Assembly: GCF_002113885.1 (NCBI RefSeq)
Contig: NW_018408491.1
Coordinates: forward strand, 190,061 to 254,060
DNA length: 64,000 nt
Reading direction: 5' to 3'
From: Mizuhopecten yessoensis
Lineage: Eukaryota
Every line of letters starts with the position of its first letter. Positions within the stretch are counted from its first letter, which is position 1. This document shows, piece by piece, positions 640 through 64,000 of the stretch. Made by a program: the position numbers and the translations under genes. The notes under the pieces were generated by a model. That model worked only from the letters and a program-made list of their open reading frames with translations, was not told the DNA's origin and searched no databases.

Positions 640-1410
640 ATACAGTTTTATACAATTAATACAATTAGCATTATATAATTATTCAATACAATTTTGAGGA
701 AGCCGCAGGAACTACCTTAATAATAATAATAATAATTCGAGGTTTCTATATACCTCTGTATCACAACTTAGTTGGTAGGTCGTCTCAAAGCGGTTCACAC
801 ATTATTATCCGTAGTTATAGGGCTTTTGCAACCAGCCAATATCTTTCTCAACTCCATGGGGAGCATACAGTCGGTGCTGCCATTACGGCGCTCACAGCTA
901 GCATTCAACAATTCTAGCACTGCCCAACCACGTACTCATTTACAGCTGAGTAGACTAGAACAAGCGGAGTAAAGTATCTTGCTCAAAGATACAACAACGT
1001 GCCGTGACGTGACTCGAATTCGCAACCCCTCGGTCACGAGTCGGGCGTCCTACCACTAGAATACCGTGCCTCCTTATCAGGCGCTAACAACTAGTCTTAT
1101 GGCACCTGGGTAATATGTCCCTATGCGTGTATTCCTGCGTGTGTGCTGGAGATGTATTGTGTTCTGTTTGTAGCAGGGGCCGTGCTTCCAACGGTATCAT
1201 TTATAGTGCCACCTCATTTGAATGCTACAGCACTGATACTGCAACATCCATCCCAGACAATTTTATACTCCACATGGGTTGTTGGAGTTATGTGGGCAGG
1301 AGAAAAAATACTTTCTCTGAAAATTCCTTGCATACGACGACTTCGGGGATAGAAACCCGACCGCCTGCGTGTAAGGCCGGAGTGTTAAAATTACTCGACC
1401 ATCCGGCCAC
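640..1410 (-). mobile_element. Old tRNA-derived SINE-like element, interrupted by a younger SINE at 720-1071
   Basis: A tRNA-like head lies on the minus strand at ~1340-1410. Segments 640-719 and 1072-1206 align contiguously with the uninterrupted copy at 22458-22666. Confidence 0.6.
720..1071 (-). mobile_element. Full-length tRNA-derived SINE (CORE-like central domain, (ATT)n tail) with 5-bp target-site duplication CCTTA
   Basis: The minus strand starts with a tRNA-like head (A box TAGTGGTAG, B box ATTCGAGTC), continues through CTTTGAGCAAGATACTTTACTCC (CORE-like) and ends in ATTATTATT. CCTTA occurs at 715-719 and 1072-1076, and the empty site GCCTTATCAGG is seen at ~22530. Confidence 0.8.
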
Positions 1411-1844
1411 AATTTAGGGAATAACCTAAGATGTGGATGATAAGATAGAATGCACTATGTCATGTTTTTACAATCCAAATGTTATCAATTGTATCAGAGG
1501 GAGGTAACTAAACAAACTTTCTAACATTTATTATCAAAACAGTTTTTAAGTGGTCGTACTTACAGATATAATATCAGATACATGTAACCACTTAACCCCT
1601 TCACCCAACACTTAGTTGTTTCCCTCCGCTATTCATCGTTTGTCAATAACATATTTAAAGTGTCGCCATGTAGACAGCATCCAATGATACACCCATCTCC
1701 GTTTTTATGAGCAATAAATACTTCCTCATAGATGTAAAATAGTATGCATGTATCATTCCCCAAGTACAGTATACATCTGGGCGACTTTTATAGAGCTTAA
1801 CACATATCTACCCAACACGAATGTATTGAAGGCGCTAACTTTTA

Positions 1845-1870
1845 TCTCCAGGCAAGGTAAAATCACTAGG
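1845..1870 (+). promoter_or_regulatory. Splice donor of the non-coding first exon of otopetrin copy A (GC donor at 1852 or GT donor at 1857)
   Basis: CAG|GCAAGGTAAAATCACTA is homologous to CAG|GTAAGGTTAAATCACTA upstream of copy B (10232). The matching acceptor is TTTTAG at 2261-2266. Confidence 0.55.
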
Positions 1871-2273
1871 TGTAAACTCTTTAAGTAGCCATTGTAAGTC
1901 AGTTTTAGTCATTCTTATTTTGAGACAAATTTAATGAGAATGCACTAAAAGCTTGATTTATTATATTTGAATTTTTGAAAATTGACACATTTCTTGTTAT
2001 TAGGTATTATTTATCAACCATGACTGCTTTATCAATGAATAAGATCATCCATCAGTCAGAAAAGTCAATTTTGCGTAAATTCTGCTTTAAAAAACATGTT
2101 TATTTTAAATAACAAAACTCTAGAATGATCAATTAGGAATATTTCGCCATGTCGGCAAAATACTTTAAATGTCTAATTTTACCGACCTTAAACACATTGA
2201 CAATGAAATAAGTTTTGTAAACTGGAATAACAAACTCTGCATCAAATATTATCTTATTAATTTTAGGATTGCA

Positions 2274-3917
2274 ATGGAGTCGTTGTGTGAAAAGCTATTT
2301 AAATCGGTATTCATTCTACCATATGTTGCTGGAAATTACCGGAGGCGGCAAAATGGATTCTGGAATTATGACTGTACAATCTCGTCCCGTGTTTTGTTCC
2401 TGATCATCGTCGCTTTAGTGATAGTGTTCACCGCCAGCAAAGAGTTAAAAACTCATGTCGAAGTTCGGTTGGGATTCATCCTGCTTCTCCTGTCAGTTCT
2501 GATGATCTGTACAGTTTTCGCTTTGTGTCGCCTTGGGCGTTTGGTACAGAAACACGGCCTCCAATCCGTTGTTTCTGCAAGAAGACACATAAGCACTCCG
2601 AAGCTTCAGATGATATTCTTGTGGGTTTTTGGACTGGGTTCGGCACTCTATTGTGCCTTATTTGTTGGAAAGCAAATCGAGTGTTCAGCATATTCTTCTG
2701 GAGGATTTTATTGGAATGTTTTGTTGTCTTTCAATATCATATTGATCCTATCGATAATCTCTGAAATGATTTTCCTCACTTACTTTTCACCATATCAGCT
2801 GAAACAGACTTCTGCAGTGAATTTCTCTTCATTTTTTTTATTAACTGCAAATATATCTGTAGTACTGTATATATATCTCATGAAAGATACATTTTTGTAC
2901 GCGATAGAAATCTATCCTGAAGGTCATTTCATATCCTGCATAGAAAGCAACAGTACAATGACTATCCTCATGCATAAATCAAAACAATTTTTGAGCCCAA
3001 CTTTTGTGGAATATGCCTTTTTATCAATAACAGTAGTTGTCGAAATATGGTCACCTACTAAAGTGCACCAACCTGATACCAGATCAGCTCACGAGGGAAT
3101 AAATGACATAGAAAATTCGGAACAGAATTCCTTATTTGATGAATTTGACAATGGGAATTCAGAGCGAAGATCTCTCCTTCATGCAGTTGCCAATGACGAG
3201 TCACAACAGGCATGTCTTCGACAGGCAGCGATCGAACCTTATCATTCCGAAAATGGCGAAAGACGAAAAGTATCCCACATAATAACGCTGGTTGGAAGTT
3301 TAACTGCAGGACTGGGACTTGTCATTTGTTATACAGCACAAGCTATGGATAAAGGAAATATAGAAAATATTCGATACGCCACTGAAATTTATGAATTAAC
3401 ATTAATTGTTGTAATGGTGCTTGTGATCTTTGTTGGATTCTATTGTTTGGTGCATTCCTGTAATCTTGACAGATCAGCTCAACCGTTGCGGCCTGGGGAC
3501 TATGTGTACTTACTGTCAGCATTTGGTGCAATTATGTTTCATATGTATGAAGTGATAGGTGGTGACGTTTCCTCCGATTCGTCCGGTAGTGTCTTTTTGT
3601 TTAAAAGTATCGTAAGCATATTCCAGGATTATCTACAAATTGTGTTTCTACTCCAGGCGAATCGATGTAAGAAATCGCGATCAAGCGTCGTTTTACTTGA
3701 ATCTGTTTTTATATTTACTTCGGTAATTAATCTAATATACTGGTTTAACAACAGTTTTCTTAAAGCTGAATTTCCAAGTACACGCATACTCGAAAATGAC
3801 CACTTTTCTAAGGAAGTGTTGGATTTAGTGTATAAAGTGTTATTACCCGTATTAGTTTTCTTTAGATTCACTTCCTTTTTAGAATTTTATGCAATTTTGG
3901 AGGAATATAAACACTAA
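2274..3917 (+). CDS. Otopetrin-family proton channel-like protein, copy A (547 aa, single coding exon)
   Basis: About 12 hydrophobic segments in two halves. Otopetrin-like motifs: FGLGS..Y, TAN, P..VEY..L...E.W, Q...Q.VFL..A, NL..W..NSF and P...FFRF.S. The start is moved from 2169 to 2274 because a splice acceptor lies 7 nt upstream and paralog B also starts MESLC. Confidence 0.88.
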   Translation: MESLCEKLFKSVFILPYVAGNYRRRQNGFWNYDCTISSRVLFLIIVALVIVFTASKELKTHVEVRLGFILLLLSVLMICTVFALCRLGRLVQKHGLQSVVSARRHISTPKLQMIFLWVFGLGSALYCALFVGKQIECSAYSSGGFYWNVLLSFNIILILSIISEMIFLTYFSPYQLKQTSAVNFSSFFLLTANISVVLYIYLMKDTFLYAIEIYPEGHFISCIESNSTMTILMHKSKQFLSPTFVEYAFLSITVVVEIWSPTKVHQPDTRSAHEGINDIENSEQNSLFDEFDNGNSERRSLLHAVANDESQQACLRQAAIEPYHSENGERRKVSHIITLVGSLTAGLGLVICYTAQAMDKGNIENIRYATEIYELTLIVVMVLVIFVGFYCLVHSCNLDRSAQPLRPGDYVYLLSAFGAIMFHMYEVIGGDVSSDSSGSVFLFKSIVSIFQDYLQIVFLLQANRCKKSRSSVVLLESVFIFTSVINLIYWFNNSFLKAEFPSTRILENDHFSKEVLDLVYKVLLPVLVFFRFTSFLEFYAILEEYKH

Positions 3918-4706
3918 ACATAATGCATGCTAGGATATATTGTATTTTGGAAGCTTTGCGATTACGCGGTGGCCGAAGATACAATGTCTTTGTCGTGTGT
4001 TTCAACAAAATGTGACAAACTGCATTATTCTACTTCAGCTTTATAAAAGCGTGTCTAATTCTGACACTGGCCCCTTAACAAACATCATGTCGCCCTCACG
4101 CGCTCAAGTTTCCCTGATCATATTTTATCTTATTCGGATCCTCTCTAGAAAAAGGGCAAGAGCCACTACAACCTAGTTCCTAATGACGGAAGCACATCTT
4201 AACAATAGCGCGGTAAGCTAAGCATCTCTACTATTGTTTTGTTTTCTTTGTTTTTGTTTCATAGTTTCAAAAGTATAATATTTATCGCCCTTACTTATCG
4301 CCCTGTTTGAAACATGATTAATCAAGGAAACCACAAAATCGGGGTTTCCTGTAGTTGGGGCAATTAATGTATAATATAGATTTTGTATAGAAAAAGACAC
4401 TCGAGATAGAGCTACAGAAAAAAACTTCAATGCATGTATTATGTATGTCTGTAGTTAAAACCGACTCTCAAAAAATGAATAATGCCATTTGAAAATTAAT
4501 TATGATGTATGTCTATCTATAGACAATCAAGTCCGTTTGTGTTAACTGTAAGTACATATAATTAGAATTGCCAAAATGTGAGTCTTGTTCGTCAAAATAT
4601 ATATTCTCACAGAATGAGGTGAATCTGTTTACACAATATATGCATTTGTCTTGCAATGTACGTTTAGTTTTATGACTCGTGTGTTACATCCAAATATATG
4701 TACATA

Positions 4707-8243: not shown

Positions 8244-9357
8244 TTTAGCTCACCTGCCCGAAGGGCAAGTGAACTTATGTCATGGTCCGTCGTCCGTCCG
8301 TCCTCGTCCGTCAACTTTTCCTTTGAACAACTTCTTCTGAAGAACGGACAGGCCTAAAGTCATGATATTTGTCTGAAAGCTTTGTTGGTAGGACCCCTAC
8401 AAAGTTTGAGAACGAAAATGACCTTGACCTACTTTCAAGGTCACAGGGGTCAAATATGTCAAAATCTTCAAACGACTTCTTCTGAAGAACTAAACGGTAT
8501 AGAATCTTCATATTTGGCTGATGGCTTCCTGGAATGGAGTTTAACAAAGTTGGAGAACGAAAATTACCTTGACCTACTTTCAAGGTCACAGGGGTCAAAT
8601 GTGTCAAACACTTCAAACTACTTCTTCTGAAGAACTGAAAGGTATATAATCTATATATTTGGCTGGTAGCTTCCTTGGATAGTGCCCAACAAAGTTTGAG
8701 AATGAAAATTAGTTTGACCTACTTTCGAGGTCACAGGGGTCAAATATGTCAAATGCTTCCAACGACTTCTCCTGAAGAACTGAAAGATATAGAATCTTTA
8801 TATTTGCTTGATGGCTTTCTGGGATAGAGCCTAACAAAGTTTGAGGATGAAAATGATATTGACCTACTTTCAAGATCACATGGGTCAAATGTGTCAGACA
8901 CTTCAAACGACTTCTTCTGAAGAACTGAAAGGTATAGAAAATTAATAGTTGGCAGGTGGCTTCCTGGGAAAGAGACAAACAAAGTTTGTGAATGAAAATG
9001 ACCTTGACTTACTTTCAAGGTCACAGCAATCAAATATGTCAATTCTGAAGAATTAAAAGGCATACAATTTTAATATATAATATAGTAGCTTTAAGGAATA
9101 GAGCTAACCAATTGGAAAAGGAAAATGACATTGACCTACTTACAAGGTCACAGGGGAAAATATGTCGAGCAACTTCTGAAGAGGAATCAAAAAGCATAGA
9201 ATCTTATAATAATATTTTGCTGGTAGTTTTAACAGATGGAGCCAACAAAGTTTGCGAGGGAAATATTTTTAGTGCAATATAATATTTAATGAGAATATTT
9301 TGCTATGACTGCTTAAATATTCAGGTGAGCGATACAGGCCCTCTTGGGCCTCTTGTT
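8244..9357 (+). mobile_element. Non-autonomous Helentron-type element (HINE/DINE-1-like) with ~6 internal 145-bp tandem repeats
   Basis: 5' TTAGCTCACCTG with a hairpin, then a (GTCC)n microsatellite. GAC(C/T)T anchors at 8426, 8571, 8716, 8861 and 9006 give a period of 145. The 3' subterminal IR CAGGTGAGC is followed by the palindrome AGGCCC-TCTT-GGGCCT, and the flanks are T-rich. Confidence 0.85.
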
Positions 9358-11307: not shown

Positions 11308-12963
11308 ATGGAGTCGTTGTGTGTTAAACTACTGAAATCAATATTCATTCTGCCATTTTGTGCTGGGAATTTAAGAAGGCGCCGAAATGGATTATGGAAT
11401 TACGACTGTACAATCTCGTCTCGTGTTTTGTTCCTGATCATCGTTGCTGTAGTGATAGTGTTCACCGCCAGCAGAGAGATACAAACACATGTCGAAGTTC
11501 GGTTGGGATTTGTTCTACTCCTCCTCACAGTAATCATGTTAAGTACAATATGTGGCATGTGTCACCTTGGATGGTTGGTACAGAAAGACGGTCTCCTATC
11601 CATCGTTTCCGCTAAACGCGACACAAGAACACCGAAACTTCAAGTGGTATTCCTGTGGGTATTCGGTATCGGGTCTGGACTGTATTGTGCATTATTTGTC
11701 GGGAAACAAATCGAATGTTCAGTACTTACTAATGGAGGATTTTATTGGCATGCTTTATTTTATTTCAATATCTTATTAACTATTTCCATTTTCACGGACT
11801 TGATTTTTCTTTCTTATTTTTCGCCGTTTGAACTAAAACAAACAACTTCAGTTAATTTTGCTATGTTTATTACTTTAACTGCAAATGTAACTGTAATACT
11901 ATATATTTATCTTTTGGATGGTACACTTTTATTTGTGAAAATAATCGACCCTGATGTTCAGTTGATTTCCTGTATAGACAACAACAGTACAATGACAATT
12001 CTTCTAGACAAATCACGACGATTTCTAGCGCCAACTTTTGTTGAGTTCGCCCTTCTATCGACAACATTACTTCTTGATATTTGGTCACTTACTCAAGTTT
12101 ATCATCCTGATAGCGGATCAACTAGCATCGAAATAAATGACAGAGATAATTCGGAACAGACAACCTTTATTCAAAGCGCTGACAATCAGGACTCGGAGCA
12201 GATATGTCTTTTAAGTTCAGTTACATGTACCAATGATGATCCGAATCAAGCATATCGTCAGCATGCAGCGATCGAACCTTATCATTCCGAAAATGGCGAT
12301 AGACGAAAAGTATCACAGATTGTAACCTTGGTTGGCAGCTTAACTGCAGGACTAGGACTTGTCGTTTGTTATACTGCACAAGCCATGGCTATGGAAAACA
12401 TAAAAAACATTCGATACGCAACTGAAATTTATGAATTAACATTAGCAGTTGTAATGGTGCTTGTGATCTTTGTTGGTTTCTTTTGTTTGACTTATTACTG
12501 TACTCCTGACAGATCAGCTAAACATCTGCGGCCTAGTGATTATGTGTACTTACTATCAGCATTTGGTGTAATTATGCTTCATTTCTATGAAGCTTTGGGT
12601 GGTGACGTGTCCTCCGATTCGGCCGGTAGTATTATTCTGTACAGAAGTATAATAAGCCTATTTCAAGATTACCTACAAGTTGTCTTTCTACTCCAGGCGA
12701 ATCGATGTAAGAAATCTCGATCAAGCGTTGATCTGCTTGAATCGGTTCTGATATTTACAATGATAATTAATATAATATTCTGGTTTAACAATAGCTTTCT
12801 TTTAGCTGAATTCCCAAGTACAAGCATACTCGAAAATGATCACTTTTCTAAGGAATTGTTGGGTTTAGTGTATAAAGTTTTGATACCTGTGGCAATATTC
12901 TTTAGATTTACATCTTTTTTAGAATTCTATGCAACATTCGAGAAATATCGTTCTCAGGAATAA
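11308..12963 (+). CDS. Otopetrin-family proton channel-like protein, copy B (551 aa, single coding exon)
   Basis: Intact ORF, colinear with copy A over its whole length, with the same motifs. Confidence 0.9.
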   Translation: MESLCVKLLKSIFILPFCAGNLRRRRNGLWNYDCTISSRVLFLIIVAVVIVFTASREIQTHVEVRLGFVLLLLTVIMLSTICGMCHLGWLVQKDGLLSIVSAKRDTRTPKLQVVFLWVFGIGSGLYCALFVGKQIECSVLTNGGFYWHALFYFNILLTISIFTDLIFLSYFSPFELKQTTSVNFAMFITLTANVTVILYIYLLDGTLLFVKIIDPDVQLISCIDNNSTMTILLDKSRRFLAPTFVEFALLSTTLLLDIWSLTQVYHPDSGSTSIEINDRDNSEQTTFIQSADNQDSEQICLLSSVTCTNDDPNQAYRQHAAIEPYHSENGDRRKVSQIVTLVGSLTAGLGLVVCYTAQAMAMENIKNIRYATEIYELTLAVVMVLVIFVGFFCLTYYCTPDRSAKHLRPSDYVYLLSAFGVIMLHFYEALGGDVSSDSAGSIILYRSIISLFQDYLQVVFLLQANRCKKSRSSVDLLESVLIFTMIINIIFWFNNSFLLAEFPSTSILENDHFSKELLGLVYKVLIPVAIFFRFTSFLEFYATFEKYRSQE

Positions 12964-19285: not shown

Positions 19286-20839
19286 TTATGATGTATATCT
19301 ACCAAATGTTGCGTAGTATTCCATAAAAGAAGTGAATCGAAAGTACATTGACACGGGAAGTAAAACTTGATACATCAAAGGAAATATTTCCTTTGTTAGT
19401 ATGGCATTTGTAAGTATCCGTGTACTGGAAAATTCATAAAGGAGAAAACTATCGTTAAACCAGAGGATAAAGTTGCTTATCATGATAAATATCAGAATTG
19501 ATTCAAGAAAAGCGACATTTGAATGAGGGTCAGATTTTTTACAACGGTTTGCATACATCAAAAATACGACCTGGAGATAGTCTTGGAAAACGCTAAGGAT
19601 GCTTGTAGCCATATATATATTTGCTGAATGATCGGAAGACACATCACCTACTATCCCTTCAAACATATGCATCATGATCATACCAAACGCCGATAGCAAA
19701 TACACATACTCCCGAGATTTCAAACCTTTCGCTGAACTGTCAGGAGTACAGTAATTTACCAAACAAAAGAATCCAGCAAGTATCACTATCATCATTACAA
19801 GTTTTAACGAAAATTCATATGTTACAGCAATGAAGCTAATACTTTCTATTTTTTCTGTGTCCAACGCCATCGCGACGTAACACACAACAAGACCGATACT
19901 TGTTGTTAAACTCACAGCCAGTGTTATCAAATGGCACACCTTCATTTTGCCTTGATTTCCGGAAATCGGATGCTCAACTGATGTGAGATCGTAAGGCAGA
20001 GATATCAACTCCGTAGTCCCTCTCTCCGTGTACGATGATCCTATATCAGAATAATGAATTTCCGTGGGTGACCATATCTCAAGAATTATGGCAGCTGAAA
20101 GAAGACCATGCTCCACAAATGTTGGATCTAAAAATTTCCGTAATTTAACCCTTAGAAAAGTCATTGTAGTATTGTCTTTTAAGCAGGAACTTAAACTCGC
20201 TTCATAGTCAATGTTTATTAAATACGAAATTGTATCGCCCATCAGATAGATGTACAAAATCACAGATATATTAGCGGTTAACAGCAATAGCATAACGTAA
20301 TTCACCAAAATAGTCTGTTTCAGTTTGAATGATGAAAAGTAAGTGATGAAAATCAGTTGTGAAAATAGGCAAAAGATCAATAAGATATTGAACCAAAGTA
20401 ATGCATTCCAATAGAATCCTCCAGAAGAACACTCGATCTGCTTGCCAACAAATAAAGCACAATACAATCCCGATGCCAGACCGAAAACCCACAGGAATAT
20501 CACTTCCAGTTTTGGTGTATTGGAGTTTCGTCTTGCAGCAACAACGGATTGGATGCCTTGTTTCCGAACAAGGCATCCCATAATATAGCTCCCAATCACC
20601 CCAGAGACCATAAGTAATGACAGAAGAATTGTGACAAATCCCAATCGAAGATTCATATGTGTTGGTATCCATTTGGTGGCGGAGAATACTATCACTATTG
20701 AAAGAACGAGCAGGAACAGAACACGGGACGAAATGGTACAATCATAATACCAGGATCCATTCTGTCGTCTTCGGTAATTTCCAGCTGCGAACGGTAGAAT
20801 GAATATTGACGTCAACAGCTTTCCCAACCAGGAATTCAT
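19286..20839 (-). CDS. Otopetrin-family proton channel-like protein, copy C (517 aa, single coding exon)
   Basis: Intact ORF colinear with A and B, with a shorter central loop. The first ATG is at 20839, 13 nt after the acceptor CTTTTAG (20853). AATAAA on the minus strand at 19206-19211. Confidence 0.9.
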   Translation of the reverse strand: MNSWLGKLLTSIFILPFAAGNYRRRQNGSWYYDCTISSRVLFLLVLSIVIVFSATKWIPTHMNLRLGFVTILLSLLMVSGVIGSYIMGCLVRKQGIQSVVAARRNSNTPKLEVIFLWVFGLASGLYCALFVGKQIECSSGGFYWNALLWFNILLIFCLFSQLIFITYFSSFKLKQTILVNYVMLLLLTANISVILYIYLMGDTISYLINIDYEASLSSCLKDNTTMTFLRVKLRKFLDPTFVEHGLLSAAIILEIWSPTEIHYSDIGSSYTERGTTELISLPYDLTSVEHPISGNQGKMKVCHLITLAVSLTTSIGLVVCYVAMALDTEKIESISFIAVTYEFSLKLVMMIVILAGFFCLVNYCTPDSSAKGLKSREYVYLLSAFGMIMMHMFEGIVGDVSSDHSANIYMATSILSVFQDYLQVVFLMYANRCKKSDPHSNVAFLESILIFIMISNFILWFNDSFLLYEFSSTRILTNAILTKEIFPLMYQVLLPVSMYFRFTSFMEYYATFGRYTS

Positions 20840-30103: not shown

Positions 30104-31720
30104 ATGGGGAATTTCTGTAGCGAGCTGATCACATCAGTTATGGTTCTACCAATCACGGCGGGGTACTACCGGAGGCGACAGAATGGTTCCGGGTACTATG
30201 ATGTTACCATATCGTCCATGGTTTTCTTCATTGTTTTCCTTTCTATTGTCATCGTATTTACAGTCAGCCAGGATATTGATATTGAGCAAGACAAGCGTCT
30301 AGCGATCGTGTTTTTGCTACTATCGACAATCATGATCTTTGGAATGATTGCATGTGTAGCTCTTGTATGTGTTATCAAAAAGCTTGGTGTTGAGTATGTC
30401 GTGTCAAGCAGACGACAAGGGAGCGTCATCAAACTACAGTTAATCTTCCTGTCGATTTTCGGATTACTGGCTGGCTTGTTTTCAGCTCTCCTCGTGGGAC
30501 AACAAATCGAATGTGGGGTGTTTAGCCCCAATATCGTTGGGATTCGTGGATTTTTCTGGGATAACAGATGTATTTTCAATATTATTACAATGCTATTTTT
30601 GGTCGTTGAGATGCTTTTCATTAGTTATTTTGCTCGGTTCCACCTGAAGCGATCTACATCCGTCCGTTATGTGTTATTTTTACTGGTGTGTGCAAATGTT
30701 TCCGTATGGTTGCATAGCGTCATTATTAACAACGAACCTTTCCCTGAGAGAATTCTAGACAGAGAGTTCGGCAACAAAAGTAAAATACCTGCCTGTCTGC
30801 AAAAAGCGACTTTTGGAAACCTTATCAATATTTCGCAACCGATACTAAAACCTTGTTTTCTGGAGTTCTGCCTATTGTCTATCACGATGCTTTTAGAGAT
30901 GTGGTCCCCAATTACGATACAGCAAACGTCTGAGGAGGAGCTGCCAATTTACCAAGAAATGGTTGACTCGTCCTATCATGTGAATGAAACAGAACGGGCA
31001 ACGCTTCTAGAACACACAGAATTTACTGAGAGCATCTTATCTGGAGGACACACCAACCAAAAGGTCTATCAACTCGTCAGCTTTTTTGTGAGTATTATCA
31101 TCGGACTAGTATTTATTACTTTTTATGTCATCTGGGTTTCACATCCAGATAGTTCTCAGATTCGTAAAGCGACGGATCAGTACTATGCAAGTATAACTGT
31201 TGCCATGATTGTGGCAGTTTTTGTAGGATTTTACTGTCTAGTTCACTATTGTAAGCCGGAAAGAACGCCTAAACCTCTTAAGGTCAGCGAGTACGTGTAT
31301 CTGTCGTCTGCTCTCGGGATTGTCATGCTGCACGTCTGCGAGGTATTATCGGCATATATAACTCCTGATGACACCAAAGATATATTAATGAGTACGTACA
31401 TTCTGGCACTCGTGCAGGTCTACCTTCAAGTTGTTTTTTTGCTACACGCCAGCCGATGTCGAAAAACTGTCACAAATTCTAGAATCCATCTCCTAGAATG
31501 TGTACTGATATTTCTTATCATTATTAACTTGACTATATGGATAAGTGACAGTTTCGTTATTGAACAGTTTGTTGAGATCAAAGCTATTGAACAAGATATT
31601 CTTGGAGACGTTCTTTGGAGTCTTTATCATAACATTCTCTTACCTGCTAGCGTTTTCTTCAGATTTTCGTCGGCACTCGAGATGTTTGCAACGTTTCAGT
31701 TGCATAGTGCCAGGCACTGA
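30104..31720 (+). CDS. Otopetrin-family proton channel-like protein, copy D (538 aa, most divergent paralog)
   Basis: Motifs AGYYRRRQNG, IEC, CAN.SVW, PCFLEF..L...LEMWS, QVYLQV.FL.A, INL..W..DSF and P..VFFRFSS. The start is reassigned from 29945 to 30104 based on the splice acceptor and the paralog N-termini. Confidence 0.88.
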   Translation: MGNFCSELITSVMVLPITAGYYRRRQNGSGYYDVTISSMVFFIVFLSIVIVFTVSQDIDIEQDKRLAIVFLLLSTIMIFGMIACVALVCVIKKLGVEYVVSSRRQGSVIKLQLIFLSIFGLLAGLFSALLVGQQIECGVFSPNIVGIRGFFWDNRCIFNIITMLFLVVEMLFISYFARFHLKRSTSVRYVLFLLVCANVSVWLHSVIINNEPFPERILDREFGNKSKIPACLQKATFGNLINISQPILKPCFLEFCLLSITMLLEMWSPITIQQTSEEELPIYQEMVDSSYHVNETERATLLEHTEFTESILSGGHTNQKVYQLVSFFVSIIIGLVFITFYVIWVSHPDSSQIRKATDQYYASITVAMIVAVFVGFYCLVHYCKPERTPKPLKVSEYVYLSSALGIVMLHVCEVLSAYITPDDTKDILMSTYILALVQVYLQVVFLLHASRCRKTVTNSRIHLLECVLIFLIIINLTIWISDSFVIEQFVEIKAIEQDILGDVLWSLYHNILLPASVFFRFSSALEMFATFQLHSARH

Positions 31721-31914
31721 GTTGCCATTGTGTATGCAACTAATTGCCTAGATGTTTATTGTTACTATAAACTATATATTTAGAGGACGGAAATGCCATA
31801 TGGTGATGGAAAATGTTAGCTTTTTTTGCTTTTTACATGTACACTTTTAAAACGTGCTTCCTACTTCGCTGTTTAAGTAACTATGATTTTGAAATATGAT
31901 GATTATGAAAGCTT

Positions 31915-32800
31915 GTGTTATGTTTTGTTTGTGTATGTTGACGCTGTGTTATATTTTGTTTGTGTATGTTTACGCTGTGTTATTTTTCGTTTTGGTATGT
32001 TGACTCGGTGTTATGTTTTGTTTTTGTATGTTGACGCTGTGTTATGTTTTGTTTTGTATGTTGACGCTGTGGTATGTTTTGATTGTGTATGTTGACGCTG
32101 TGTTATGTTTTGTTTTGGTATGTTGACGCTGTGGTATGTTTTGATTGTGTATGTTGACGCTGTGTTATGTTGTTTTGTTTTGGGATGTTGACGCTATGGT
32201 TTTGTTTTTGTATGTTGACGCTGTGTTATGTTTTGTTTTGTATGAAGACGCTGTGTTATGTTTTGTTTATGTATGAAGACGCTGTGTTATGTTTTGTTTT
32301 GGTATGTTGATGCTGTGTTATGTTTTGTATGTTGACGCTGTGTTATATTTTGTTTTGGTATGTTGACGGTGTGTTATGTTTTGTTTTGTATGTTGACGCT
32401 GTGTTATGTTTTGTTTTGTAAGTTGACGCTGTGTTAATTTTTGTTTTGTATGTTGAAGCTGTGTTATGTTTTGTTTTGTATGTTGACGCTGTGTTATGTT
32501 TTGTTTTGGGATGTTGACGCTATGTTATGTTTTGTTTTGTATGTTGACGCTGTGTTATGTTTTGTTTTGGTATGTTGACGCTGTGTTATGTTGTTTTTTT
32601 TGTATGTTGACGCTGTGTTATGCTTTGTTTTGGTATGTTGACGATGTGTTATGATTTGTTTTTGTATGTTGACGCTTTGTTTTGTTTTGGTATGTTGACG
32701 CTGTGTTATGCTTTGTTTTGGGATGTTGACGCTGTGTTATGCTTTGTTTTTGTACGTTGACGCTGTGTTATGTTTTGTTTTTGTATGCTGATGCTGTGGT
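31915..32800. repeat. TG-rich 30-32-bp minisatellite (~28 copies), TATGTTGACGCTGTGTTATGTTTTGTTTTG
   Basis: Directly visible. It lies between the copy D stop and the first AATAAA I can find (32916-32921). Confidence 0.95.
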
Positions 32801-44314: not shown

Positions 44315-45694
44315 TTAGCTCACCTGGCCCAAAGGGCCAAGTGAGCTTATGGCATGGTGCGGCGTCCGTCATCCGTCCCTCATCCGACGTCTGTCCGGCG
44401 TCAACCTTTTACTTTAAACAACTTCTTCTCAGTAGCCAAAAGGCCTAGGGTGATGATATTTGGCCAGAAGCATGCTTGGATGAAGGGCTACCAAGTTTGT
44501 TCAAATACATGACCTTCATCAATTTTAAAGGTCACAGGGGTCAAATATGTTAAAATCTTTAAACAACTTCTTCTGAATAACCAATTAAAGAAGCCTAGGA
44601 TGATGATATTTGGCCAGTAACATGCTTGGATGAAGGGCTTCCAAGTTTGTTCAAATGACCTTGCCTTATATTTAAGATCACAGGGGTCAAATATGTTAAA
44701 ATCTTTTAAACAACTTCTTCTGAATAACCGAGAGGCCTAGGGTTATGATATTTGACCAGTAACATGCCTGGATGAAGGGCTACCAAGTTTGTTCAAATAA
44801 ATGATCTTGACTTATATCTAAGGTCACAGGGGTCAAATATGTTAAAAACATTTAAACAACTTTTTCTGAATAACCGAGAGGCCTAGGGTGATGATACTTG
44901 GGCAGTAATATGCTTGGATGAAGGGCTACCAAGTTTGTTCAAATAAATGACCTTGACTTATATTCAAGGACTCAGAGGGCAAATATGTTTGAAATATTTA
45001 AACAACTTTTGAATAACCAATAGGCCTAGGGTGATGATATTTGGCTAGTAGCATGCTGGGATGAAGGGCTATAAAGTTTGTTCAAATGAATGACCTTCAT
45101 CTTTTTTCAAGGTCACAGGATCAAATATGTTCTTAACCTTTAAACAACTTCTTCTGAATAAACAAGAGGCCTAGGATAATGCCAGTAACATGCTGGGATG
45201 AAGGGCTACTAAGTTCAAATGAATGACCATGACATATATATTTTAAGGTCACAGAGGTCAAATATTTTTAAAACCATTGAATGACTTCTTAATAAGCAAA
45301 AGGCCAAGGGTGATGATACATGTATATTTGGCCAGTAACATGCTGGGATGAAGGACTACCAAGTGAATGACCTTCGCCCATATTCAAGGTTACAGTGGTC
45401 AATATATGTTTAAATCTTTAAATGATTTGTTCTGTATAACCAGAAGGTCCAGGGCAATGATATTTTTCCAGAAGCATGCTGGGTTGGAAGACTATAAACT
45501 CTGTTCAACCTAATATTATAATGTCCTTGTTCGACATTCAAGGTCACAGGTGTCATATGTTTATACATCTTTTAATAGGTTCTTATGAATGAAACACTGA
45601 TATTTTGCCTGTAGCTGTATTTTAGTCCACTTTTAAGATTACAAGTGTGAGATTAATACCAGGTGAGCGATGCAGGCCCATTGGGCCTCTTGTT
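44315..45694 (+). mobile_element. Non-autonomous Helentron-type element (HINE) with ~8 internal ~146-bp repeats, in VKOR intron 2
   Basis: TTAGCTCACCTGGCCCAAAGGGCCAAGTGAGC start, (GTCC)n-like tract, AAGGTCACAGGGGTCAAATATG monomers, and end CAGGTGAGCGATGCAGGCCCATTGGGCCTCTTGTT. Confidence 0.87.
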
Positions 45695-46765: not shown

Positions 46766-47463
46766 GAAGTGGTACGGGGATCTGTAAAGATCTGTAAAGT
46801 GGTACGGGGATCTGTAAAGATCTGTAAAGTGGTACAGGGATCTGTAAAGTGGTACAGGGATCTGTAAAGTGGTACAGGGAACTGTAAAGTGGTACGGGGA
46901 TCTGTAAAGATCTGTAAAGTGGTACAGTTCCCCGTACCACTTTACCGATCCCTGTACCACTTTACATATCCCTGTACCACTTTACAGGGATCTGTAAAGT
47001 GGTACGGGGATCTGTAAAGTGGTACGGGGATCTGTAAAGTGGTATGGGGATCTGTAAAGATCTGTAAAGTGGTACGGGGATCTGTAAAGTGGTACCGGGA
47101 ACTGTAAAGTGGTGCGGGGATCTGTAAAGTTGTACGGGGAACTTTAAAGTGGTGCGGGGATCTGTAAAGTTGTACGGGGAACTTTAAAGTGGTGCGGGGA
47201 TCTGTAAAGTTGTACGGGGATCTGTAAAGTCGTACGGGGAACTGTAAAGTGGTGCGGGGATCTGTAAAGTTGTACGGGGATCTGTAAAGATCTGTATAGT
47301 GGTACGGGGACCTGTAAAGTGGTACAGGTATCTGTAAAGTGGTACGGAGAGCTGTAAAGTGGTACAGGGATCTGTAAAGGGGGACGGGGAACTGTAAAGT
47401 GGGACGGGGAACTGTAAAGTGGTACGGGGAACTGTAAAGTGGTACGGGGAACTGTAAAGTGGT
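46766..47463. repeat. 20-bp minisatellite GGGGATCTGTAAAGTGGTAC (~33 units) with an internal 3-unit inversion
   Basis: Directly visible, with an inverted block at ~46924-46987. It ends ~50 bp before the VKOR exon 3 acceptor. Confidence 0.95.
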
Positions 47464-47515
47464 ATTGTTAGGTTGTCTTTCCTGTCCTCTTTCTCAAGTT
47501 TTATTTTCATTTCAG

Positions 47516-63583: not shown

Positions 63584-64000
63584 TTATTGCATTTTCAAAG
63601 ACCTGTACTGCTTAAAGGTTGCAAAATATTCCAAAAACGAAGTGAATCTAAAGAAAACTGACACAGGTAGTAAAACGCTATATGCCAAACTCAACACTCC
63701 CTTTGAAAACTGCTCTTGTTTCAATACTCGTGTACTTTGAAATTCCTCGAGGATAAATCTATCACTAATCCAGAAGATAAAGTTGCCCACGAAGATAAAA
63801 ATCAGTACTGAATCAAGCAGAGTAATCTGTGAGCGTGCGCAAGATTTTCTACATCGATTAGCGTGAAGTAGGAACACAACTTGAAGATAGTCCTGGAATA
63901 TTGATAATATGCTTGTGCACAGAAGACAACCAGAAAAGACATCTGAAGAGATGCTACCTGCAATGGCCTCACAAATGTGCAACATGATCATACAACATGC
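63584..64000 (-). CDS. Otopetrin-family protein, copy E, C-terminal part (5' end beyond the window)
   Basis: The frame is open to the window edge. SIFQDYLQVVFLLHANRC, NFIFWISD and LPVSVFFRFTSFLEY match copies A-C. Confidence 0.88.
   Translation of the reverse strand, partial: ACCMIMLHICEAIAGSISSDVFSGCLLCTSILSIFQDYLQVVFLLHANRCRKSCARSQITLLDSVLIFIFVGNFIFWISDRFILEEFQSTRVLKQEQFSKGVLSLAYSVLLPVSVFFRFTSFLEYFATFKQYRSLKMQ

What the first reader, a model, noticed from the sequence alone, without database searches (positions are those of the whole stretch)
2761..3890. Putative proton-pathway residues are altered and differ between paralogs
Known (from recall): otopetrins conserve a TM12 FYR(M/F)H motif whose His faces the TM6 Glu, plus two Gln-Asn-Tyr triads. 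Seen: TM12 reads FFRFTS (A, B, E), YFRFTS (C) and FFRFSS (D), so both the Tyr and the His are lost, and a shared Glu appears downstream (LE[FYM]). The TM6 EY position reads EY/EF/EH/EF in A/B/C/D. The TM4 Gln position reads E/D/Q/E (ISEMIF, FTDLIF, FSQLIF, VVEMLF). TM10 is QDYLQ, but QVYLQ in D. Inference: this clade may have different pH gating or selectivity, or may not conduct protons, and each paralog may be tuned differently. This is the best candidate here for a new biological system.
Basis: partly seen in the sequence, partly recalled or inferred. Interest (0 to 1): 0.8.

Follow-up and report, generated by a model that had tools for sequence, protein, structure and literature searches.

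The report
Scallop otopetrin-like channels lacking key histidine
The Yesso scallop carries a tandem array of intact, selectively constrained otopetrin-like membrane proteins (one shown transcribed) that keep the proton-channel fold and its central glutamate but lack the histidine thought to receive the proton, and this histidine-less type proves common among invertebrate relatives.

Summary
The window (Mizuhopecten yessoensis) holds five otopetrin-like genes with uninterrupted coding regions, and every motif quoted is there.

- FFRFTS aligns with FYRMHS. The constriction Tyr becomes Phe and the essential His becomes Thr (Ser in copy D).
- SEMIF holds the TM4 Gln position.
- EY holds the central TM6 Glu and the N-barrel Tyr.

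The genes look functional. ORFs are intact, dN/dS is 0.2-0.4, orthologues occur in four scallop genera, and copy A has a spliced transcript.

Tyr-to-Phe, TM6 Tyr-to-Phe, TM4 Gln-to-Glu and the downstream acid are all common in His-bearing relatives. Three of the scallop's own four canonical OTOP genes have Phe at the Tyr position. Only the His loss stands out.

That loss is not special to this locus. All of about 25 single-exon copies examined in this genome lack the His. So do 115 of 167 sequences tabulated (the window and genome copies plus the nearest cluster representatives), with at least 9-14 changes of state on the tree.

The central Glu, the C-barrel Gln, Asn and Arg, and both prolines stay conserved. 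Published work calls the His absolutely conserved and essential, so these proteins are a natural test of the Glu/His relay model. Function is untested. The scan noted a similar trio elsewhere in this genome.

The parts
1775..1854 (+). 5' untranslated exon of copy A
   Evidence: RNA-run contig (X1, record 2) covers 1775-1854 and joins directly to 2265.
1855..2264 (+). Intron in the 5' UTR of copy A (GT..AG)
   Evidence: Joint 1854 to 2265 skips 410 bases with GT..AG ends, contig depth 12.7.
2274..3917 (+). Copy A coding region: 547 aa plus stop, one exon, otopetrin-like
   Evidence: ORF. Pfam PF03189 at 69 bits against a cut-off of 27.8. AF2 model with 12 TM helices, and the top 12 PDB fold matches are all OTOPs. 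RNA contigs cover 2265-4537.
2763..2765 (+). Glu164 of A, at the N-barrel triad Gln position (XtOTOP3 Q232)
   Evidence: Profile-to-6o84 alignment. Reads E, D, Q, E in A-D.
3009..3014 (+). Glu246-Tyr247 of A: central TM6 Glu (XtOTOP3 E321) and N-barrel triad Tyr (Y322)
   Evidence: The Glu is invariant in all scallop copies. The Tyr position reads Y, F, H, F in A-D.
3540..3542 (+). His423 of A on TM9, a clade-typical His at the position of XtOTOP3 S524
   Evidence: Alignments. His in 21 of 22 scallop-clade proteins. Ser in the vertebrate structures.
3624..3638 (+). Gln451 to Gln455 of A (QDYLQ): XtOTOP3 Q554 and the C-barrel triad Gln Q558
   Evidence: The second Gln is present in 165 of 167 relatives.
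3729..3731 (+). Asn486 of A: C-barrel triad Asn (XtOTOP3 N623)
   Evidence: Invariant in the scallop set.
3858..3875 (+). TM12 motif F529-F530-R531-F532-T533-S534 of A, aligned to F665-Y666-R667-M668-H669-S670
   Evidence: The Tyr is Phe and the His is Thr.
3882..3884 (+). Glu537 of A, one helical turn after the lost His (His+4)
   Evidence: 20 of 22 in the clade. An acid is also common at this position in His-bearing relatives.
3918..4537 (+). 3' untranslated region of copy A, approximate end
   Evidence: RNA-run contigs reach 4537 (records 3 and 4). Contigs cannot fix a transcript end.
11308..12963 (+). Copy B coding region (551 aa), FFRFTS
   Evidence: 69% identical to A, dN/dS 0.32.
19286..20839 (-). 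Copy C coding region (517 aa from ATG 20839), YFRFTS
   Evidence: Identical to the NCBI-annotated protein P0009, LOC110460135.
30104..31720 (+). Copy D coding region (538 aa from ATG 30104), FFRFSS and QVYLQ
   Evidence: The start was chosen by alignment to B and to paralogue L005.
63596..64000 (-). Copy E, C-terminal 134 aa only (cut by the window end), FFRFTS
   Evidence: tblastn and translation.

Best explanation
These are five tandem members of a large otopetrin-like subfamily that has lost the TM12 histidine. The subfamily is expanded in scallops, present in other bivalves, and probably occurs in other invertebrates.

Shown:
- The proteins are true otopetrin-family members with the 12-helix, two-barrel fold.
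- The coding regions are intact and under purifying selection.
- Copy A is transcribed and spliced.
- They keep the buried TM6 Glu, the TM6 and TM12 prolines, and the C-barrel Gln, Asn and Arg.
- They have Thr or Ser where canonical OTOPs have the His proposed as proton acceptor.
- They have Phe for the FYR Tyr, a hydrophobic residue for XtOTOP3 Q520, and a clade-typical His at the TM9 position of S524.

Inferred:
- Everything needed to bind a proton at the central Glu is conserved, and the lost-His site stays polar in most relatives (H, T, N, K, E, Q, S). They most likely still handle protons.
- The Glu-to-His hand-off into the intracellular cavity would be replaced by a hydroxyl/water path to nearby acids (Glu537 one turn below, Asp409 on TM9).
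- That change should alter conductance, desensitisation and dependence on intracellular pH relative to OTOP1-3.
- A many-copy, fast-evolving gene family whose one assayed copy was near-silent in bulk RNA fits a sensory or local acid-base role.
For: - Family and fold: Pfam PF03189 at 51-96 bits for A-D. AF2 model with pLDDT 70, and the top 12 PDB fold matches are all OTOPs, with TM-score 0.60-0.77 normalised by target.
- Residue mapping: three profile alignments to 6nf4, 6nf6, 6o84 and 8ug6 agree.
- Conservation of the rest of the machinery in His-less proteins: TM6 Glu 100/115, TM10 Gln 113/115, TM11 Asn 107/115, TM12 Pro 112/115, Arg 99/115.
- The genes are functional: intact ORFs, and dN/dS 0.21-0.43 in 11 of the 12 measurable paralogue pairs (0.59 for L024/L028). 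Orthologues with the same FFRFTS motif occur in Pecten, Argopecten and Ylistrum. A spliced RNA contig covers copy A.
- Extent: 4 canonical multi-exon OTOP genes keep the His, against about 25 single-exon His-less copies in the same genome.
- The window genes sit in a 43-row all-non-His clade (support 95) inside a 64-row non-His clade.
- Role of the His: PMC6483595 (H669A and H669Q give no current; H-bond to D509) and PMC11343839 (Glu325/His567 bridge; His as proton acceptor, tied to desensitisation).
Against: - No functional datum exists for any His-less otopetrin-like protein, so conduction is inferred from conservation only.
- In XtOTOP3, and reportedly zebrafish OTOP1, replacing the His abolishes current. 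That argues against conduction unless the protein context compensates.
- I had no model coordinates, so the proposed substitutes (Glu537, Asp409, His423) were placed by helix register, not by measured distances.
- Expression was shown for copy A only, in one study. Three bulk RNA runs were nearly silent.
- The TM9 His co-occurs with His loss only loosely (40/115 against 8/52, not corrected for phylogeny).
Confidence: 0.45

Rival explanations
1. They are otopetrin-fold proteins that no longer conduct protons. Having lost the acceptor His, they would act as something else, for example modulatory partners that dimerise with the four canonical OTOPs, or carriers or sensors of another ligand or ion.
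For: - His to Ala or Gln abolishes current in XtOTOP3 (PMC6483595), and the His is the proposed proton acceptor (PMC11343839).
- Q520 of the C-barrel hydrogen-bond network and the triad Tyr are also replaced.
- Canonical His-bearing OTOPs coexist in the genome and could supply the channel function.
Against: - The buried TM6 Glu, both gating prolines and the C-barrel Gln, Asn and Arg are kept as strictly as in His-bearing relatives. That is hard to explain if proton handling were abandoned.
- The substituted site stays polar in most lineages.
Confidence: 0.3
2. They are ordinary proton channels. In this sequence context the His is dispensable and behaviour is essentially that of other OTOPs, so the motif change has no functional consequence.
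For: - The His column has changed state at least 9-14 times on the tree of the nearest relatives, and 115 of 167 sequences tabulated lack it. This suggests the site is evolutionarily tolerant.
- An acid at His+4 is common and could serve the same purpose.
Against: - Every characterised OTOP reported in the papers read has the His, and mutating it is lethal to function (PMC6483595, PMC11343839).
- A non-titratable Thr or Ser cannot shuttle a proton by side-chain flipping as proposed for the His.
Confidence: 0.15
3. They are decaying duplicates (pseudogenes) whose motif changes are neutral damage.
For: Many tandem copies, low or absent signal in three bulk RNA runs, and some fragmentary copies elsewhere in the genome.
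Against: - Full-length ORFs without stops in A-D and about 20 other copies.
- dN/dS 0.21-0.43 in 11 of the 12 measurable pairs.
- The same motif is kept in orthologues of four genera.
- A spliced transcript exists for A.
Confidence: 0.03
4. The apparent loss is an alignment artefact, and the true His or Tyr equivalents lie elsewhere.
For: Identity to solved OTOPs is only 9-17%, and a single-sequence PDB search found nothing.
Against: - Three profiles of different composition give the same register around invariant anchors (TM12 Pro-x4-F-x-R-x-x-S, TM11 N-x3-W, TM6 P-x3-E).
- No His occurs within TM12 of A-E.
Confidence: 0.02

Closest known systems
Vertebrate OTOP1/OTOP2/OTOP3 proton channels (structures 6nf4, 6nf6, 6o84, 8ug6)
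   Same: - Pfam Otopetrin domain and 12-TM double-barrel fold.
- Central TM6 Glu preceded by a Pro.
- TM5 Asn, TM10 Gln, TM11 Asn-x3-Trp, and TM12 Pro and Arg of the FYR box.
   Different: - TM12 His is Thr or Ser, and the FYR Tyr is Phe.
- The TM4 Gln is Glu or Asp in A, B and D.
- The XtOTOP3 Q520 position is hydrophobic, and S524 is His.
- The TM9 acid lies one residue later in a gapless alignment.
- Only 9-17% identity, and a single coding exon.
C. elegans OTOP8 (8ug4/8ug5) and the Glu/His-bridged proton passage model (PMC11343839)
   Same: Best Foldseek match of the copy A model. Glu325, Pro559 and Phe563 have equivalents in A: Glu246, Pro525 and Phe529.
   Different: The His567 equivalent is Thr533, so the salt bridge and side-chain flip proposed for proton hand-off cannot form.
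The scallop's own four canonical otopetrin genes (G000 contigs C5592, C4526, C2776, C1345)
   Same: Same family. Three of the four already read Phe at the FYR Tyr position.
   Different: The canonical genes are multi-exon, score 204-275 bits against Pfam (51-96 for A-D) and keep the His (F-F/Y-R-F-H-S).
Other His-less otopetrin-like proteins: Mytilus 'proton channel OtopLc-like' (FYHFKS), Pinctada imbricata 'Otopetrin-2' (YFRFQS), and an unnamed environmental clade (F-F/Y-R-F-N-S)
   Same: They lack the TM12 His while keeping the Glu, Gln, Asn and Pro core.
   Different: Different replacement residue (Lys, Gln, Asn, Glu) and different clades. None is functionally characterised in the literature I could search.

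Membership tests
Otopetrin family (Pfam PF03189; OTOP/OTOPL proteins) | Significant match to the Otopetrin profile above the curated cut-off | tested here: met
   A-D score 69.1, 60.9, 51.3 and 95.8 bits against a cut-off of 27.8, but mainly over profile positions 151-434.
Otopetrin family (Pfam PF03189; OTOP/OTOPL proteins) | Twelve TM helices forming two homologous six-helix barrels | tested here: met
   The AF2 model has 12 long helices. Foldseek's top 12 PDB matches are all OTOP1/2/3 or CeOTOP8, probability 1.00, target-normalised TM-score 0.60-0.77.
Otopetrin family (Pfam PF03189; OTOP/OTOPL proteins) | FYR box in TM12 (Hughes 2008, PMC2268672: present in all family members) | tested here: inconclusive
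   The box is recognisable (P-x3-[FY]-[FY]-R-F-x-S), with the Arg kept in A-E. The Tyr is Phe, which is also seen in 14 of 52 His-bearing relatives.
Proton-conducting OTOP channels as currently modelled (Glu/His relay) | Buried central Glu on TM6 (XtOTOP3 E321) | tested here: met
   Glu246 of A. Invariant in all 15 scallop copies aligned. Aligned to E321.
Proton-conducting OTOP channels as currently modelled (Glu/His relay) | TM12 His (XtOTOP3 H669, CeOTOP8 H567), the proposed proton acceptor | tested here: not met
   Thr in A, B, C and E, and Ser in D.
Proton-conducting OTOP channels as currently modelled (Glu/His relay) | C-barrel constriction triad Gln-Asn-Tyr | tested here: not met
   Gln455 and Asn486 are present. 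The Tyr position is Phe in all five copies; copy C has a Tyr one residue earlier.
Proton-conducting OTOP channels as currently modelled (Glu/His relay) | N-barrel constriction triad Gln-Asn/Asp-Tyr | tested here: not met
   Only the Asn is kept in all copies. The Gln position reads E, D, Q, E and the Tyr position reads Y, F, H, F in A-D.
Proton-conducting OTOP channels as currently modelled (Glu/His relay) | Acid-evoked, Zn2+-sensitive proton current; homodimer | not testable with these tools
   Needs expression and electrophysiology or pH imaging, and a solved or multimer-modelled structure.

The most novel reading that the evidence does not exclude
His-less otopetrin-like proteins form a functionally distinct class. 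Either they conduct protons by a route that bypasses the inter-barrel Glu/His bridge, or they have switched substrate or role. One candidate bypass runs through the C barrel, where this clade has placed a His at the XtOTOP3 S524 position just above the Gln/Asn constriction. Either outcome would mean the Glu/His relay is not the general otopetrin mechanism, and that bivalves have built a large sensory or acid-base gene family on the variant.
Probability: 0.2. Interest if true: 0.8.

Novelty: new variant of a known kind. Interest (0 to 1): 0.55.

Why it matters
The current mechanistic model of otopetrin proton channels rests on a TM6 Glu and a TM12 His described as absolutely conserved (PMC11343839). 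Mutating the His kills the channel (PMC6483595).

In this scallop all ~25 single-exon copies examined lack that His, and 115 of the 167 related sequences tabulated lack it too, while the rest of the machinery is preserved under selection.

These proteins are ready-made natural mutants. Expressing a few of them, with and without the His restored, would test directly three things:
- whether the relay is obligatory;
- whether it sets desensitisation and dependence on intracellular pH;
- what else the fold can do.

For mollusc biology, an expansion to about 25 or more copies alongside four canonical genes suggests a role in acid, CO2 or ammonium sensing, or in local pH control. Both are relevant to calcification and ocean acidification. 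That role is a conjecture.

Tried and rejected
- A single-sequence search of copy A against PDB sequences found nothing. Profiles were needed.
- The word-indexed homologue search returned only 18 scallop-family proteins, with both a single query and the alignment A2. The exhaustive representative search was therefore used.
- Naming the relatives mostly failed. 20 representatives were looked up and only 6 carry names: Mizuhopecten, Mytilus, Pinctada, Stomoxys, Saccoglossus. One contig look-up gave only an ENA sample code. The Atlas look-up gave only 'commonest Mollusca / Nematoda'. The last homologue search, on the Asn-type clade, returned 60 unnamed environmental proteins. The taxonomic range of His loss outside bivalves therefore stays open.
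- The pseudogene idea is rejected.
- Misalignment is rejected.
- 'Tyr loss is clade-specific' is rejected.
- 'The downstream Glu is a clade-specific compensator' is rejected, because an acid there is common in His-bearing relatives.
- 'Triad positions are unusually variable between paralogues' is rejected.
- TM9 His as a strict compensator for His loss is not supported. The association is loose and confounded by phylogeny.
- Saotome et al. 2019 is not in the held library under its DOI. Its PMC id, PMC6564688, appeared later in a reference list but was not tried. Its zebrafish result is cited only as reported in PMC11343839.
- Literature searches for otopetrins in molluscs or bivalves, or for natural loss of the His, found nothing relevant.
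- The scallop's canonical OTOP genes are multi-exon. I analysed only their last coding exon by reference and built no joined model.
Full report
**What is there**

The window is Mizuhopecten yessoensis (Yesso scallop), contig G000:C5164:190061-254060. The species follows from the names of identical and same-contig proteins and the genome search.

It carries five otopetrin-like genes whose coding regions have no introns:

| Copy | Coordinates | Strand | Note |
|---|---|---|---|
| A | 2274-3917 | + | |
| B | 11308-12963 | + | |
| C | 19286-20839 | - | |
| D | 30104-31720 | + | |
| E | 63596-64000 | - | only the last 134 codons; cut by the window end |

A-D each match Pfam Otopetrin (PF03189) above the cut-off, at 51-96 bits, mainly over the second two-thirds of the profile.

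An AlphaFold2 model of A was built on 19 scallop-family sequences (mean pLDDT 70). It has twelve long helices. Its twelve best PDB fold matches are all OTOP1, OTOP2, OTOP3 or C. elegans OTOP8, with target-normalised TM-scores of 0.60-0.77. After them the scores collapse to unrelated MFS transporters.

**The observation**

| Position | A | B | C | D | E |
|---|---|---|---|---|---|
| TM12 | FFRFTS | FFRFTS | YFRFTS | FFRFSS | FFRFTS |
| Glu three residues after that motif | present | present | present | present | present |
| TM6 | EY | EF | EH | EF | not in window |
| TM4 | SEMIF | TDLIF | SQLIF | VEMLF | not in window |
| TM10 | QDYLQ | QDYLQ | QDYLQ | QVYLQ | QDYLQ |

**Are these the right positions?**

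A single-sequence search against PDB sequences failed. Three profiles of different make-up give one consistent register:
- 19 scallop-family proteins;
- 15 diverse scallop paralogues;
- 59 proteins spanning His-bearing and His-less relatives.

Against Xenopus OTOP3 (6o84), whose chain numbering matches the paper's:

| Copy A | XtOTOP3 equivalent |
|---|---|
| Glu164 | Q232 |
| Asn193 | D262 |
| Glu246-Tyr247 | E321-Y322 |
| Gln451 and Gln455 | Q554 and Q558 |
| Asn486 | N623 |
| Pro525 | P661 |
| Phe529-Phe530-Arg531-Phe532-Thr533-Ser534 | F665-Y666-R667-M668-H669-S670 |

One detail on the source paper. Its text names the C-barrel triad Gln as 'Gln585'. Residue 585 of the chain is an Arg in a loop, and the invariant TM10 Gln is Q558. 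I take 585 for transposed digits.

Three further changes were not in the finding:
- The Q520 position, part of the C-barrel hydrogen-bond network, is hydrophobic.
- The S524 position on TM9 is His in 21 of 22 scallop-clade proteins.
- The TM9 acid that pairs with the His in canonical channels (D509) is one residue later in a gapless alignment.

**What the literature says about these residues**

Chen et al. (PMC6483595):
- They define the two constriction triads.
- N-barrel mutants mostly still conduct, while C-barrel Gln and Asn mutants do not.
- E321Q is dead.
- H669A and H669Q are dead, and H669 hydrogen-bonds D509.

Gan et al. (PMC11343839):
- They call the Glu and the His 'absolutely conserved'.
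- They visualise a Glu325-His567 salt bridge in CeOTOP8.
- They propose that the His accepts the proton from the Glu and releases it to the cytosol, and that this underlies desensitisation.

Hughes et al. (PMC2268672) state that the FYR box is present in all family members they sampled (vertebrates, arthropods, nematodes).

**The genes are alive**

- A-D and about twenty further copies have uninterrupted reading frames.
- Pairwise dN/dS is 0.21-0.43 in 11 of the 12 measurable paralogue pairs, which range from 55% to 96% identity. One more divergent pair gives 0.59.
- Orthologues in Pecten, Argopecten and Ylistrum keep FFRFTS.
- In one RNA study, assembled contigs cover 2265-4537 of copy A. They join an upstream exon (1775-1854) to position 2265 across a GT..AG intron. 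This shows a processed transcript and fixes the start codon at 2274.
- Three bulk RNA-seq runs from other studies were almost silent over the gene, so expression is low or restricted.

**How special is the motif change?**

The scallop genome has 42 Otopetrin matches:
- Four are multi-exon genes scoring 204-275 bits. All four keep the His, but three of them read Phe at the Tyr position (IFFRFHS, ILFRFHS, IFFRFHS against IFYRFHS).
- The rest are roughly 25 single-exon copies scoring 50-94 bits. All of them lack the His, with Thr, Ser, Glu, Ala or Phe in its place.

An exhaustive profile search of 1.84 billion cluster representatives found 1478 relatives at E of 0.001 or better.

Two tallies were made. 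One search counted the P-numbered proteins only (the best 150 representatives plus the scallop-family hits of the word search). There the His column reads H 52, T 23, N 23, K 12, E 10, Q 10, S 5, with a few hydrophobic residues. One search added the window and genome copies, giving 167 sequences with a residue in that column: 52 with His and 115 without.

In the His-bearing subset:
- the TM12 Tyr is Phe in 14 of 52;
- the TM6 Tyr is Phe in 17 of 52;
- the TM4 Gln is Glu in 4 of 52;
- an acid sits at His+4 in 30 of 52.

I could show this only for sequence relatives, not for channels proven to conduct.

The His loss is the real departure, and it is widespread. On a FastTree phylogeny of 155 full-length proteins:
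- the window genes lie in a 43-row clade with no His (support 95), inside a 64-row clade with no His (support 81);
- the His/non-His character needs at least 14 changes, 9 of them forced by well-supported branches.

Named His-less relatives include Mytilus 'proton channel OtopLc-like' (FYHFKS) and Pinctada 'Otopetrin-2' (YFRFQS). Named His-bearing ones include a fly and a hemichordate. A separate all-Asn clade of at least 60 clusters is known only from unnamed environmental contigs. I could not establish the taxonomic range beyond bivalves.

**What stays the same in the His-less proteins**

| Residue | Conserved in His-less set |
|---|---|
| TM6 Pro | 105/115 |
| TM6 Glu | 100/115 |
| TM10 Gln | 113/115 |
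| TM11 Asn | 107/115 |
| TM12 Pro | 112/115 |
| TM12 Arg | 99/115 |

These proportions are about the same as in His-bearing relatives.

The two prolines are the hinges of the helix-to-loop transitions. In the Gan model these expose the Glu to the outside and make room for the hand-off.

The substituted site itself remains polar in about nine of ten proteins. That fits a side chain still facing a water-filled cavity.

**Mechanism**

This section is inference. The machinery for taking a proton onto the central Glu looks intact, and the acceptor does not.

My preferred reading (about 0.45) is that these are still proton-handling channels. The proton would leave the Glu through a hydroxyl/water path toward nearby carboxylates (Glu537 one turn below position 533, Asp409 on TM9). 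The expected consequences are changes in rate, desensitisation and sensitivity to intracellular pH.

The main rival (about 0.3) is that conduction is lost and the proteins serve as partners or sensors.

A smaller possibility (about 0.15) is that the His is simply dispensable here.

The idea that each paralogue is tuned differently gets little support. Within 22 scallop-clade proteins the TM4 and TM6 triad columns are of average variability for TM positions. The Gln/Glu/Asp alternation at the N-barrel constriction is nonetheless a real chemical difference.

The clade-typical TM9 His is a lead, not a finding. By helix register it should sit about one turn above Q520, toward the outer vestibule of the C barrel. 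I had no coordinates to measure it, and its association with His loss across the family is loose.

**Comparison, novelty and limits**

These are members of the otopetrin family by profile and by fold. They fail two features of the channel as currently modelled: the TM12 His and the complete triads.

The genes are already annotated as uncharacterised proteins or 'Otopetrin-2'. I found no paper in the held library on otopetrins in bivalves or on natural loss of the His.

I class this as a new variant of a known kind. Its interest is moderate because it offers a direct natural test of the Glu/His relay model.

Nothing here tests function.

Noticed in passing
window 1775-2265: Copy A has a 5' UTR exon and a 410-base GT..AG intron ending 9 bases before ATG 2274. 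The longer ORF from ATG 2169 lies inside that intron and is not the start.
   Followed up: yes
G000 contigs C5592, C4526, C2776, C1345 (L001-L004): The scallop keeps four canonical multi-exon otopetrin genes with the TM12 His. Three of them already have Phe or Leu-Phe in place of the FYR Tyr motif.
   Followed up: partly
L007, L024, L028; L027; L010/L011; L022 (own genome): Other single-exon scallop copies replace the His with Glu (FYR[LI]ES), Ala (YYRFAS) or Phe (FFRFFS). One pair has also lost the Arg (YYSFTS).
   Followed up: partly
PDB chain 6o84_A versus the text of PMC6483595: The paper's 'Gln585' cannot be the C-barrel triad Gln. Residue 585 is an Arg in the TM10-TM11 loop, and the invariant TM10 Gln is Q558. 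The digits were probably transposed.
   Followed up: yes
P0121 and relatives P0186-P0240; L031: A large otopetrin-like clade with Asn at the His position (48 of 55 checked) is known only from unnamed JGI/ENA environmental contigs. Its host organisms are unknown.
   Followed up: partly
window 8326-9042 and 44413-45364: Two arrays of a satellite with a unit of about 145 bases (4.9 and 6.6 copies), lying between the otopetrin-like genes.
   Followed up: no
window 31914-32798: A 31-base minisatellite (29 copies) begins about 200 bases after the stop codon of copy D. It accounts for the strong GC/AT skew in that bin.
   Followed up: no
window 46767-47464: A 20/40-base tandem array (GATCTGTAAAGTGGTACGGG-like) in a locally GC-richer stretch.
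   Followed up: no
window 1000-1300: Very high RNA-contig depth (456-1398) with many loose ends at 1139-1176 in all four runs. It looks like a dispersed, expressed repeat rather than part of copy A.
   Followed up: no
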